Below are positions 2,910 through 50,573 of a stretch of DNA of 64,000 bases, in pieces. The stretch lies in assembly GCA_025558095.1 (NCBI GenBank), contig JAIVFI010000013.1, positions 124,001-188,000 of the forward strand. Reading direction: 5' to 3'. The DNA comes from Hyaloraphidium curvatum SAG 235-1 (lineage: Eukaryota; Fungi; Monoblepharomycota). The translations under genes and the position numbers were made by a program. The notes below the pieces were generated by a model. That model did not search any database. It worked only from the letters and a program-made list of their open reading frames with translations, and was not told the origin of the DNA. Numbering within the stretch: position 1 is the first letter of the stretch; every line of letters starts with the position of its first letter.

Positions 2910-4628
2910 TCACAAGTGCGCGTTGATGATCGCCTTGACCTCCATGAATTCGAAGATGCCTTCTTTGCCTCTGCAGGTTTTGTCAGCTATGGTCGGACGG
3001 ACGATGCAAGCACCCACCCTTCCCGTCCGTTACCTGACTGCCGGTAGCCGCCAACAGGCACATCGAATGCCGCGCCGCTGCCCTGGAGTCCGATGAGTCC
3101 CGCCTTGAGCCTGCGGGCAATCTTGGCCGCTGAATCGGTGTCCTTCGCGTACACGTAGCCAGCAAGTCCGTAGGCTAGCGTACACGACGAATCAGAAAGA
3201 GAGCATGGTAGGACCGAATATGCCACTAACTCGTCTCGTTGGCAATCCTAACAGCCTCGTCGACATCGCTGTACGGGATCATGCAGAGCACCGGGCCGAA
3301 GATTTCCTCTCGCGCGATCCGCATGTCGTTGCGCACGTCGGCAAAGACGGTCGGCTTGACGAAGTAGCCCCGCTCGAAGCCCTCCGGTCGGCCGTCGCCG
3401 CCCGCAATGACCCTCGCGCCCTCCTCGATGCCCTTGCGAATGAGACCCGTGACCTTCTTATACTGCGCAGCATTGGCAAGCGGTCCGATCCCATCCCCGG
3501 CCTTTGCGGCGCGCTTGGGATCGGCCACCTTGACGGATCCGGCGACCTTGGTTGCGATGGCCACGGCCTCCTCGTAGCGGCTCCGAGGCACGAGCATCCT
3601 CGTGGGGGCGACGCAGGTCTGCCCGCTGTTGTTCATCACGTCCAGGATCCCCTTGGAGACGGCCTTCTCGAGGGGAGCGTCGGCGGTAATGATGTTAGCC
3701 GATTTGCCGCCGAGTTCCTGGCAGACACGCTTCACAGTCGGAGCTGCAGCTTCGGCGACGAGAATGCCGGCGCGGCCCGAACCGGTGAACGAGATCATGT
3801 CGATTCCTGTGAAAAAAAGACGTTGGCAGATGTCCGAAAGACACAGTTGGCGTCACCGCACCTGGATGAGAGGCGATATCATGGCCGACGCCCGGTCCAT
3901 CGCCGTTGATGAGGTTGAAAACGCCCGGGGGCACTCCAGCTTCATGCAGGGCTTCTGCGACGACTATGGCGTCCAGCGGTGCAAGTTCCGAGGGCTTCAA
4001 GATCACTGTGCAACCAGCTGCAAGTGCCGCCGCAACTTTCATGGTAACGATCGTCGTTGGCCTGTCGAGGCGGCAAGATGAGCTGCGGATCCGACGATTC
4101 GCGGTCAACCAACCAGTTCCACGGCGTTATCAGGCCGCATACGCCGATGGGCTCGTGCCGAACGAGGTGTTTCCCGCCCCTCCTCTCCTCGAACTCGAGC
4201 TCCTGCAGAGCCTTGATGGTGAAGCCCAGTAGACCGACCGGCCCCGCCGCTTGAGCAGTGTCGGCAAGGTATTTCGGTGCTCCCATCTCGCTCGTGATCT
4301 TGGCGGCCATTTCCGGTATCCTTTTCTTCAAGGCCGCGGCAAACCGCTGCAGCAACGCCACCCGCTCGTCCTTTGTCGTCTCCGAGAAGGTCTCGAAGGC
4401 TCTGCGCGCAGCGGCGACGGCTCTGTCGACGTCCGCTTTGGAGCCGATGGCAATGCGGGCGGTCGGCTCCTCAGTCGCGGGGTCAATCACGTCATGCTTG
4501 ACGAGCTTTCCGGCGGGAGGAACCCATTCGCCGTCGATGTAGAAGCTCAGGTGCTCCTGCAGCGTGCCCCCGACGATAAGAAGCCAAACTCTCCCGGCAG
4601 CAATGAAGACGCTTACGGGAACGCTCAT
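2910..4628 (-). CDS. Aldehyde dehydrogenase (bacterial CddD-like subfamily), multi-exon, C-terminus -AHL
   Basis: Motifs [54 protein letters not shown]. First intron 4557..4616 (GTAAGC..CAG). Last exon [17 protein letters not shown]. Confidence 0.92.
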
Positions 4629-48166: not shown

Positions 48167-50573
48167 CTAGTTGATCCTGCGCCCGCCGACCGCCTGCCAC
48201 TCCCTGTCCCTGAGCACGTTCTTGCGGATCTTGCCCGTCGCGGTCTTGGGCAGCTCCATCTCGAGCTGGATGCGCGCGGGGATCTTGAAGCCCGCGAGGT
48301 GCTTGCGGCAGTGCTGGATTAGCTCGAACTCGATCTCGCCGGGGGCGAACTGCTCGTGCTCGATCGCTTCCTGCTTCAAGACCACGAATGCCTTCGGCCG
48401 CTCGCCCCAAGTGTCGTCGGGCGTGGGGACGACGGCGACCTCGAGAACCTTCGGGTGCGACGCGATCACGTTCTCCACCTCGACCGTCGAGATGTTCTCG
48501 CCCCCGCTGATCACGATATCTGCATTTGGTGAGCACCAGCAGGTTCGTGGAAGCTCCATACCTTACCTTTTTGCCGGTCCTTGAGTGCGACGTAGCCGTT
48601 GGGTTCGCGCACGGCGAGGTCCCCGCTGTGGAGCCAGCCTCCCTTGAACGCCTTGGCCGTCGCCTGGGGATCGTTGTAGTACCCGAGCTTTGGGTTAGGT
48701 GGAGGGAAAGGTTGAGCGAGGATGCGGCGCAAGCACAAACAACTCAAACCATCGTGATGTTGCCTTTGTGGGTTTTAGGTGGAAGGAAAGGTTGACGGAG
48801 GATGAGGCGCAAGCACAGACAACTCACCTCGGAAGATGACCTCTCCCATCGTCTGCCCGTCTGCCGGGACATCGTTCATATTCTCATCCACCACGCGCAG
48901 CTCGTCCTGCATCGGGTAGTTCTGCCCCTGCATGGCCATCTCGTGCGCCAGGTCGGTGTAGTTGCCCTCTTCGACGTACTTGTCCCAGCTCTCCTGAGGG
49001 TAGCAGCGGGCCGCGGGTCCCAAAGTTTCCGTCATTCCTGAGCGCAGAAGCGTGGTTGGAGGAAGATATTCAGGGGGAGCGGAAAGCCGAGGCCCTGAGG
49101 CAACTCACCATACACGTGGACGACCTCCATGCCGAGCTCAGTCATCCGCTTGATTAGCGCAGGCGAGGGCGGCGAGCCAGCAACCATAACTCTGGAAGAA
49201 TGAGGAGGAGTCCGTTAGGCTTTACCTGGACCACCAGCACCGCGGCAGCACACGCACCTCATCGGGTGGTCGAGTTTCTTGGCGTTGGGGTTGGCGCAGA
49301 GGAAAGACTGAACCGTAGGAGCTCCGTTGTAGTGCGTGATCTTCAGATCGGTGAAGTAGGACCATATGAGGTCGTAGTCGACCTTCCGGAGGCATACGTG
49401 GGCACCACCCATGAGGGCAACGGCCCACGGGATACACCAGCCGTTGGCGTGGAAGAGCGGTAGGATCCAGAGGTAGCGCGTCTTCGTTGTGAAGCCCATC
49501 TCGAGCGTCTGGGCGATGGCCTCCATGAAACTCTGGCGGTAGGAGTCTGGAAGCGATCACCACTCGTCAGAGAGCGCCCAAGAGCCCGAAAGCCGTCGAA
49601 ACCCACGCATGACACCCTTCGGAGGCCCTGTAGTCCCCGAAGTATAGCAGAGAGAGATCAATTCATCCTCATTCTCGAGGACGTCAAAGCTCCACCAAGT
49701 CCTCGGCTCCGCTTCGCTGAGGACTGTCGCGTACTCGTCCTGCCCGACGATGCCCGTGTCTCCATCGATGATAACCCGCTCCACGCCCCATTCATTCATC
49801 TCCTCCTTGAGGTGGGCCAGGTCCTTGTCGACGACCGCGAACCGGGCCCCGGAATGCTTGATGATGTAGCTGATCTCCTCGCTCTTAAGGCGCGTGTTGA
49901 CGCAGATAATCACGCCTCCGGCTGCCCGTCGATAGAGATGAGAAACATAATGGGGCTCCAAAACAAGCCGAACACACCGAGCGGAACGGCGAAGTGGCCT
50001 TCGAGGATGGAAGGGGTGTTGGGGCAGACGTACGCTACGCGGTCCCCTTTCCTCAGCCCCATCGCCCTGAGGGCACTGGCGAAACGCAAAACGCGCTCGT
50101 TCATCTCCTTGTAGTTGTAGCTCCGGCCCTCGTGGACCACGGCGAGGTTCGTGGGCCATATCCTCGCGGCGCGCTCCAGCAGCCACGCCGGGTTCAGCTC
50201 GGTCCGGTACGGCTTAGACTGAAGGCTCTGCGGGATCTGCGAATCTAAACCAAGTGCATCAGAATGTCACGACGGTCTCTGGAGCTCAAAGGAACCCACA
50301 ATCGTTCTTGAGGCCGAAGGGGCCCAACTCGGCGACCTTCGCGGCCTCGGCCTGCCGTACGGCCCGCGAGACCGAGAAGCGGCGCGCAGATGACCTAATT
50401 CTCGTCGGCGAGGCGGTCACATCACGCGAAGCGGCAACTGCTTGCGTTCCGGTGACCAAGAGGGCGGTGCGGAATCTCTCCAACGCCCCGTTCACGGAGA
50501 CCGACGCCACAGCGTTTCCCGCCCGCCCCAAGAGGGCTGAGCGGTTGGCAACCAGCACTTTGGCTGTTGCCAT
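48167..50573 (-). CDS. AMP-binding acyl-CoA synthetase (AAE7/AEE21-like) with Arg/Ala-rich presequence
   Basis: YTSGTTGPPKG, LPLFHANGW, YGMTET, RGNITMLGYY (via microexon), WLHSGD, ISGGENISTVEVE, LPKTATGK. Seven introns. Confidence 0.92.
48688..48827 (-). repeat. Twin near-identical introns (48764..48827 and 48688..48749) flanking a 14-nt microexon
   Basis: gtgagttgtctgtgcttgcgcctcatcctccgtcaacctttccttccacctaaaacccacaaag versus gtttgagttgtttgtgcttgcgccgcatcctcgctcaacctttccctccacctaacccaaag. Confidence 0.9.

What the first reader, a model, noticed from the sequence alone, without database searches (positions are those of the whole stretch)
48688..48827. Twin introns around a 14-nt microexon: a snapshot of intron copying
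Seen in sequence: two consecutive introns (64 and 62 nt) in the acyl-CoA synthetase are near-identical along their whole length. The 14-nt exon between them (GC AAC ATC ACG ATG, part of the conserved RGNxxMxGY motif) is not duplicated, and the two introns are in different phases (1 and 0). Simple tandem duplication would have copied exon sequence. Established: neighbouring introns are normally unalignable, and multi-copy introner elements drive intron gain in some algae and fungi. Inference: one intron was recently copied 14 nt away (introner-like insertion, reverse splicing or conversion), creating the microexon. No other intron in this window matches this pair.
Basis: partly seen in the sequence, partly recalled or inferred. 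Interest (0 to 1): 0.85.

Follow-up and report, generated by a model that had tools for sequence, protein, structure and literature searches.

The report
Locally copied twin introns in fungus
Two neighbouring introns of a fungal acyl-CoA synthetase gene are copies of each other, 14 bases apart and both missing from the closest relatives, a rare but previously described kind of same-gene intron copying that shows how a new intron can arise.

Summary
On the minus strand, introns of 64 nt (48827-48764) and 62 nt (48749-48688) flank a 14-nt exon (48763-48750). They match at about 90% of aligned positions, with two small indels. All other intron pairs in the gene match at 44-57%. The similarity stops exactly at the splice sites, and the 14 nt are not duplicated.

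BLAST, core-pattern and profile searches of the 31.9-Mb genome find no third copy. The orthologue in the nearest available relative (Logan SRR23967301 contig) and in Gonapodya sp. JEL0774 reads straight through this region (FRGNITMLGYY, WRGNAIMTGYY). So both introns are lineage-specific and must be spliced as predicted. Seven more distant homologues also lack both positions.

A second twin pair, around a 19-nt thioredoxin WCPPC exon, exists elsewhere in the same genome.

This fits the published class of "same-gene intron duplications" without exon duplication (fungi, Oikopleura, C. elegans). It does not fit a dispersed introner family.

The most likely mechanism is spliceosome-mediated re-insertion (reverse splicing) next to the parent intron. 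This mechanism, and which intron is the parent, remain inferred.

RNA-seq and raw-read checks could not be run. Verdict: a real new member of a known kind, of moderate interest.

The parts
48167..50573 (-). AAE7-type AMP-binding acyl-CoA synthetase gene ('Hc-a'): nine exons and eight short introns. The start codon is inferred at 50573 and the stop is at 48169-48167.
   Evidence: Pfam PF00501 and PF13193 match the exons. The exons align along the full length of chytrid orthologues and the L046 orthologue. The N-terminal exon was translated. Phases were checked by hand.
48764..48827 (-). Intron A, 64 nt, phase 1. It starts GTGAGT, has a CTAAA branch-like site, ends AAAG, and sits at the site GAG|GC.
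   Evidence: The position is empty in every homologue examined.
48750..48763 (-). 14-nt microexon coding (G)NITM of the conserved RGNxxMxGY motif.
   Evidence: The L046 orthologue reads FRGNITMLGYY without interruption. Chytrids have RGNNVM / SGNLVM here.
48688..48749 (-). Intron B, 62 nt, phase 0. It starts GTTTGA (G at +5 kept), has a CTAAC branch site 8 nt from the end, ends AAAG, and sits at the site ATG|CT.
   Evidence: The position is empty in L046 and Gonapodya. Unrelated introns lie 3 nt away in Spizellomyces and 4 nt away in the paralogue Hc-b.
48828..49037 (-). Exon upstream of intron A (…MTETLGP…GEVIFR + first base of Gly).
   Evidence: 69% identical to the L046 orthologue.
48567..48687 (-). 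Exon downstream of intron B (LGYYNDPQATAKAF…DRQK).
50245..50299 (-). Intron i1 (55 nt, phase 1); absent in L046.
   Evidence: the L046 ORF 2090-2860 is continuous here.
49922..49977 (-). Intron i2 (56 nt, phase 1); absent in L046.
49547..49606 (-). Intron i3 (60 nt, phase 1); lies 9 nt downstream of the L046 intron, in the same phase.
49192..49257 (-). Intron i4 (66 nt, phase 2); absent in L046.
49038..49108 (-). Intron i5 (71 nt, phase 1); lies 8 nt upstream of the L046 / Blyttiomyces phase-0 intron.
48520..48566 (-). Intron i8 (47 nt, phase 1); absent in L046 and Gonapodya, and 15 nt upstream of the intron conserved in chytrids.

Best explanation
The two introns are copies of each other. In the lineage of this early-diverging fungus (earlier notes call it Hyaloraphidium curvatum), one ordinary short spliceosomal intron of an acyl-CoA synthetase gene was duplicated from its first to its last base, with no exon sequence, into a site 14 nt away in the same gene. 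This left a 14-nt piece of old coding sequence as a microexon.

The most likely route runs through the splicing machinery. An excised intron still held by the spliceosome was spliced back, by reverse splicing, into a nearby site of a nascent transcript of the same gene, or into the DNA being transcribed. It was then fixed in the genome by reverse transcription and recombination or repair.

Shown: the duplication, its exact limits, the absence of any further copy in the genome, the absence of both introns from the nearest relatives, and a second such pair in the same genome.

Inferred: the RNA-mediated mechanism, which copy is the parent, and that both introns are spliced efficiently.
For: - About 90% identity over the whole intron, against 44-57% for other intron pairs; 0 of 5000 shuffles reach the score.
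- The similarity stops exactly at GT and AG, and the 14-nt exon and both flanks are not duplicated. Simple tandem or segmental duplication would have copied exon sequence.
- The twins share an unusual AAAG 3' end.
- No other copy exists in the 31.9-Mb genome. BLAST with each intron finds only the pair. The 20-21-nt cores with up to 3 mismatches match at control level. A sequence profile of the pair scores 69 and 66 bits on the twins and at most 17 bits elsewhere.
- Length (62-64 nt against 47-71 nt for the other introns compared) and folding energy (z -0.2 and -1.5) are those of ordinary introns.
- The orthologue in the closest relative (80% amino-acid identity in the last exon) and the Gonapodya orthologue are uninterrupted across both sites. 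The former encodes the same FRGNITMLGYY.
- A second pair occurs in the same genome, around a 19-nt thioredoxin exon, and again aligns from the 5' splice site to the 3' AG.
- The genome holds at least 146 reverse-transcriptase matches, many in long open frames, so a source of RT exists.
- The published class and interpretation match: PMC3609843 (same-gene duplications, half of them without exon duplication) and PMC3879977 (four same-gene pairs in Oikopleura, attributed to reverse splicing).
Against:
- No raw-read check of the assembly was possible.
- A cDNA-recombination route would often erase neighbouring introns, yet i5 (210 nt upstream) and i8 (121 nt downstream) are still present. The substrate would therefore have to be unspliced pre-mRNA or DNA, or the conversion tract very short.
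- Site B (ATG|CT) is a poor proto-splice site.
- Both positions are new, so the origin of the first copy is unknown and the direction of copying cannot be decided.
- Exact boundaries could also result from selection acting on rare DNA-level copies.
Confidence: 0.55

Rival explanations
1. DNA-level local copying: a double-strand break or replication template switch 14 nt from an existing intron was repaired with filler DNA copied from that intron. Only the rare event with exact intron limits survived selection.
For: Break-repair models of intron gain are published (discussed in PMC8469720 and PMC3443670). Earlier unchecked notes report introns in this genome that were born from tandem DNA duplication. 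AGG recurs at both junctions of intron A, as a short target duplication or microhomology would. This route does not need RT, and it explains why the neighbouring introns are intact.
Against: The copy has exactly the intron's limits at both ends, and so does the second pair. A DNA process has no reason to respect those limits, so two exact cases would need strong filtering by selection. Intron B has no flanking repeat longer than 1 nt.
Confidence: 0.2
2. Two separate insertions of a mobile introner-like element that happened to land 14 nt apart. The other family members have been lost or have decayed.
For: Both positions are new in this lineage, and the gene gained several other introns. Introner-like elements are known to decay quickly into ordinary introns (PMC3609843).
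Against: No third copy was found by BLAST, core patterns or profile search. The length is ordinary and there is no stable fold. Two hits 14 nt apart in a 32-Mb genome are very unlikely without local copying. The thioredoxin pair is likewise local and unrelated in sequence.
Confidence: 0.08
3. Segmental tandem duplication of intron plus 14 nt, followed by exact loss of the extra 14 nt.
For: Half of the published same-gene intron duplications are segmental (PMC3609843). An intermediate could be tolerated if the outer splice sites were used.
Against: No trace of a second 14-nt copy remains on either side. This route needs a base-exact 14-nt deletion as a second step, and the same again for the thioredoxin pair.
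Confidence: 0.05
4. Two independently gained introns were later made alike by gene conversion.
For: Conversion between close repeats is common.
Against: Conversion needs prior similarity. The tract would have to stop exactly at four splice sites. Both positions are empty in the relatives.
Confidence: 0.04
5. Artefact or dead gene: an assembly error produced the second copy, or the gene is a pseudogene and the introns are not spliced.
For: No reads and no RNA could be examined.
Against: The copies differ by about six substitutions and two indels, and they flank unique, required coding sequence. All nine exons are open, in phase and conserved against the orthologue.
Confidence: 0.03

Closest known systems
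Same-gene intron duplications (SGD) of fungi, non-segmental type (Collemare et al. 2013, PMC3609843; van der Burgt et al. 2012)
   Same: Near-identical introns confined to one gene. Flanking exons are not duplicated. Length and folding energy are like those of ordinary introns. Numbers per genome are low. The authors interpreted them as possible intron transposition within the same transcript.
   Different: This case is in a zoosporic, early-diverging fungus, whereas the survey as read here named only Dikarya species. The spacing is only 14 nt, which creates a microexon. Both positions are shown to be empty in the nearest relatives.
Nearly identical intron pairs of Oikopleura dioica (Denoeud et al. 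2010, as summarised in PMC3879977 and PMC4122922)
   Same: Pairs of near-identical introns, both members in the same gene, attributed to reverse splicing. They are very rare: four pairs among about 75,000 introns.
   Different: The host is an animal with many non-canonical splice sites. I could not read the primary paper for the spacing between pair members.
Introner elements and introner-like elements (Micromonas, Dothideomycetes; PMC3609843, PMC4457414, PMC9860276)
   Same: An intron sequence that has been copied to a new site with seamless limits.
   Different: Those are families of tens to thousands of copies in unrelated genes. The fungal ones are about twice as long as ordinary introns and strongly folded. 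Here there are two copies only, of ordinary length, with no significant fold.
Intron gain by tandem duplication of an exon segment holding AG|GT
   Same: A local duplication that yields a new intron; earlier notes report it in this same genome (unchecked).
   Different: In that mechanism the new intron is a copy of exon sequence. Here the intron has no similarity to the surrounding gene, and no exon sequence is duplicated.
Intron 'sliding' (positions less than 15 nt apart between homologues; Stoltzfus 1997 and Rogozin 2000, cited in PMC4457414)
   Same: Two intron positions lie within a 15-nt span. In this gene, two other introns lie 8 and 9 nt from those of the closest orthologue.
   Different: Sliding is inferred between species. 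Here both positions are occupied at once in one gene by related sequences, which is what a copy-then-loss route would pass through.

Membership tests
Same-gene intron duplication, non-segmental (SGD) | Two or more near-identical introns within one gene | tested here: met
   About 90% identity over the ungapped columns; 0 of 5000 shuffles reach the score.
Same-gene intron duplication, non-segmental (SGD) | Flanking exon sequence is not duplicated | tested here: met
   The similarity ends at the splice sites and the 14-nt exon is unique.
Same-gene intron duplication, non-segmental (SGD) | [quoted passage not shown] | tested here: met
   Limits of sensitivity: the BLAST look-up missed an 80%-identical partner, and the profile search scored 150 of 340 candidates.
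Same-gene intron duplication, non-segmental (SGD) | Length and predicted stability like those of ordinary introns | tested here: met
   62-64 nt against 47-71 nt for the other introns compared; fold z-scores -0.2 and -1.5.
Introner / introner-like element | Many copies in unrelated genes | tested here: not met
   Only the two copies were found.
Introner / introner-like element | Longer than regular introns, with a stable predicted structure (fungal ILEs) | tested here: not met
Introner / introner-like element | Terminal repeats or target-site duplication (transposon-type introners) | tested here: inconclusive
   No inverted repeats in the region. AGG recurs at both junctions of A, but B has only 1 nt.
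Intron born from tandem exon duplication | The intron sequence is a copy of the adjacent exon | tested here: not met
   Local alignment of A and B to the rest of the gene, on both strands, scores at shuffle level.
Functional spliceosomal intron (each of A and B) | GT...AG limits, a branch-like site, and removal restores a conserved reading frame | tested here: met
   The orthologue reads FRGNITMLGYY uninterrupted.
Functional spliceosomal intron (each of A and B) | Spliced junctions seen in RNA | not testable with these tools
AMP-binding acyl-CoA synthetase, AAE7-like | AMP-binding and AMP-binding_C domains and core motifs | tested here: met
   PF00501 and PF13193 match the exons. Homologues are named AMP-dependent synthetase or acyl-activating enzyme 7.

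The most novel reading that the evidence does not exclude
Twin introns may be the transient middle stage of short-range intron relocation ('sliding' by copy-then-loss). An intron is copied a few to about 20 nt away by the spliceosome, the gene carries both copies around a microexon for a time, and then one copy is lost.

This would explain several things in this one gene:
- None of its eight intron positions coincides with those of its closest orthologue.
- Two of its introns lie just 8 and 9 nt from that orthologue's only two introns.
- The genome is reported to be rich in microexons.
Probability: 0.2. Interest if true: 0.8.

Novelty: new member of a known kind. Interest (0 to 1): 0.55.

Why it matters
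How new spliceosomal introns arise is still largely argued from indirect evidence. Clean cases in which the source of a new intron is identifiable are few: four pairs in Oikopleura, three in C. elegans, and some tens in Dikarya.

This locus is unusually clean. The copy has base-exact limits and no exon duplication. The genome holds no other copy. The pre-insertion state is preserved, with the same amino acids, in a close relative. A second pair exists in the same genome, and earlier unchecked notes report other newborn introns there. Together these suggest that intron gain is ongoing in this fungus and could be studied directly in strains and transcripts.

The very short spacing also gives a concrete, testable route for two long-debated patterns: intron 'sliding' and the origin of microexons.

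Tried and rejected
- **Genome-wide sample for more twin pairs.** Only about 160 kb of held sequence could be scanned. It yielded the two selected pairs, one non-coding repeat and one weak GC-rich repeat. A more permissive scan misbehaved and was discarded.
- **Searching for the species' own annotated protein or spliced transcripts.** None was found.
- **Origin of the gene (vertical or from bacteria).** A tree with exon fragments as separate rows scattered the fragments and is inconclusive. One fragment had been cut in the wrong frame.
- **P0002, the closest full-length representative.** No DNA was available for it and its relatives are uninformative.
- **MFS neighbour of L046 as a second gene for intron comparison.** Too many paralogues; dropped.
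- **Embedded RNA genes.** Rfam finds nothing in 48500-49000, and there are no snoRNA boxes by eye.
- **Similarity of A and B to other sequences.** Comparison with the paralogue's nearby intron, the orthologue's introns and the surrounding exons gave chance-level scores.
- **Identity of run SRR23967301.** Not found in the paper library.

Full report
**What is there.** The finding lies in a gene on the minus strand. Reading that strand gives this order:
- an exon ending …GEVIFR plus one base;
- intron A, 48827-48764 (64 nt);
- a 14-nt exon, 48763-48750;
- intron B, 48749-48688 (62 nt);
- an exon starting LGYYNDPQATAKAF.

Across the junctions the frame reads …IFRGNITMLGYY…, the conserved RGNxxMxGY motif of AMP-binding enzymes. 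Pfam finds AMP-binding and AMP-binding_C on the exons. Homologues are named AMP-dependent synthetase or acyl-activating enzyme 7.

I mapped the whole gene, about 50573-48167, and from homology. It has eight introns of 47-71 nt: i1 to i5, then the twins A and B, then the last intron, numbered i8. All exon lengths agree with the intron phases.

**Is the similarity real?** Yes.
- MAFFT gives 54 identical columns out of 60 ungapped columns, plus a 2-nt indel at the 5' splice site and a 4-nt indel before the 3' end.
- Global identity including gaps is 83%, against 44-57% for the 20 other pairs among the seven introns compared.
- No shuffle out of 5000 comes near the observed score.
- The similarity starts at the first G and ends at the last G of the introns. 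The flanks are unalignable, and the 14 nt occur only once.
- Both twins end in AAAG, while the five other introns compared end in CAG.
- A repeat scan of the whole window finds no other intron-like pair.

**Is it a dispersed element?** No copy beyond the pair was found in the 31.9-Mb assembly.
- BLAST with each intron returns only the pair.
- The two best-conserved 20-21-nt cores with up to three mismatches match at the level of the reversed-pattern control.
- A sequence-only profile of the pair scores 69 and 66 bits on the twins and at most 17 bits (E of 0.2 or more) elsewhere.

The BLAST look-up is not very sensitive: it missed an 80%-identical partner. The profile search is therefore the stronger result.

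The introns are of ordinary length and do not fold better than shuffles. Rfam finds nothing in the region. These are the properties published for "same-gene duplications", not for introner-like elements (PMC3609843).

**Are the positions old or new?** I searched the exons one by one by reference.

The last exon found three close relatives. I could fetch two of them.
- **L046** is a 42-kb Logan contig of run SRR23967301. It is 80% identical in the last exon and 65-85% identical in the others. It holds the orthologue with one continuous frame across both sites, encoding …GEVVFRGNITMLGYYKDPEATAK….
- **L047**, from Gonapodya sp. JEL0774, is 73% identical and also uninterrupted (WRGNAIMTGYYKDD).

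Five chytrids, Hesseltinella and a plant AAE7 gene have no intron at either position. A Massospora gene model also shows none, but that model looks unreliable.

Only Spizellomyces has an intron close by, 3 nt downstream of B. The paralogue in the same genome (L045) has one 4 nt downstream of B, with unrelated sequence.

Both A and B are therefore specific to this lineage. The relative's uninterrupted identical peptide also shows that the 14 nt are original coding sequence and that both introns must be removed exactly as predicted.

**The gene as a whole.** The L046 orthologue has only two introns. None of the eight introns here sits at either of those positions.
- i1, i2, i4, A, B and i8 have no counterpart in L046.
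- i3 lies 9 nt downstream of the L046 intron, in the same phase.
- i5 lies 8 nt upstream of the other L046 intron, a position that L046 shares with Blyttiomyces.
- The paralogue also shares no intron position with this gene.

Intron turnover in this lineage has clearly been high.

**A second case.** An earlier first-reader note (s1-699434) mentioned sister introns around a WCPPC microexon. I located the locus with a degenerate pattern and checked it in L026, minus strand. In a thioredoxin gene, an 89-nt and a 51-nt intron flank a 19-nt exon coding (T)WCPPCK. The short intron aligns with the long one from the 5' splice site to the 3' AG, apart from one 38-nt block. The flanks are again not duplicated, and the sequence is unrelated to A and B. 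The BLAST look-up with the long intron returned only that intron itself; it did not report even its 80%-identical twin, so it shows little about other copies. Local, base-exact intron copying is therefore recurrent in this genome.

**Mechanism.**
- A simple tandem duplication of intron plus exon would leave a second 14-nt copy, and there is none.
- Conversion between independent introns needs prior similarity and a tract ending at four splice sites.
- Two hits of a mobile element 14 nt apart, with no other copy in the genome, are very unlikely.

What remains is a process that copies exactly an intron and acts locally. The classical candidate is reverse splicing of the excised intron into a nearby site of a transcript of the same gene, or into the transcribed DNA, followed by reverse transcription and recombination or repair. 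The genome holds at least 146 reverse-transcriptase matches, many in long open frames.

A DNA-repair route that copies the neighbouring intron as filler cannot be excluded. It would more easily explain why the neighbouring introns i5 and i8 were not erased.

The direction of copying is undecided. Site A is the better proto-splice site (GAG|G), and the region of B is a recurrent insertion spot in homologues.

**Comparison with what is known.**
- Collemare et al. (PMC3609843) counted 82 same-gene duplicated introns in 24 fungi. Half had no exon duplication, and the authors suggested intron transposition within the same transcript.
- Oikopleura has four same-gene pairs among about 75,000 introns (PMC3879977).
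- Three such introns were reported in C. elegans (cited in PMC3609843).

This finding is a new member of that kind, not a new kind. What it adds:
- the host lineage;
- the 14-nt spacing that creates a microexon;
- the preserved empty sites in close relatives;
- a second pair in the same genome.

Intron positions less than 15 nt apart between species are called "sliding", and one proposed cause is loss with immediate re-insertion (PMC4457414). A twin pair is what a copy-then-loss route would pass through. The 8-nt and 9-nt displacements of i3 and i5 fit this idea but do not prove it.

**Limits.**
- No RNA and no raw reads could be examined.
- No genome-wide sample could be taken.
It is supported only by Gonapodya being the closest named homologue.
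- The organism behind SRR23967301 is unknown.

Noticed in passing
L026:1447-1605 (= G000:C1, about 1171763-1171921), minus strand: A second twin-intron pair: thioredoxin introns of 89 and 51 nt flank a 19-nt exon coding (T)WCPPCK. They align from the 5' splice site to the 3' AG, apart from one 38-nt block.
   Followed up: yes
L046:2090-4094: The orthologue of the synthetase in the nearest available relative (Logan SRR23967301) has only two introns (2853-2948 and 3338-3404), against eight here. Both lie 8-9 nt from introns of the window's gene, and no position is shared.
   Followed up: partly
L045 (G000:C34:265663-268860): A paralogue of the synthetase in the same genome has at least nine short introns. 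None is at a position shared with the window's gene. Several lie 2-9 nt from intron positions of other fungi, for example at MFHCN and at GVMYHYRG.
   Followed up: partly
window:19870-19981: A 38-39-nt direct repeat (90-95% identical) with 71-nt spacing, in what looks like non-coding sequence upstream of a gene. A small local duplication of unknown meaning.
   Followed up: no
window:59400-61940: Families of 42-69-nt direct repeats at spacings of 342-1248 nt (repeat families D1-D3). They look like repeated Cys- and Thr-rich coding modules of one or more genes.
   Followed up: no
G000, many contigs: At least 146 matches to reverse transcriptase (RVT_1). Many have identical scores and sit in open frames of 1300-1800 aa, which suggests recently active retroelement families.
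   Followed up: no
L019:2176-2237 (Spizellomyces punctatus): An unrelated 62-nt phase-0 intron lies 3 nt downstream of the position of intron B. The paralogue L045 has one 4 nt downstream. The RGNxxMxGY codons seem to be a recurrent site of intron insertion.
   Followed up: partly
L032:2432-2651: A 76-nt direct repeat, 75% identical, 144 nt start to start, in GC-rich sequence. It was not examined.
   Followed up: no
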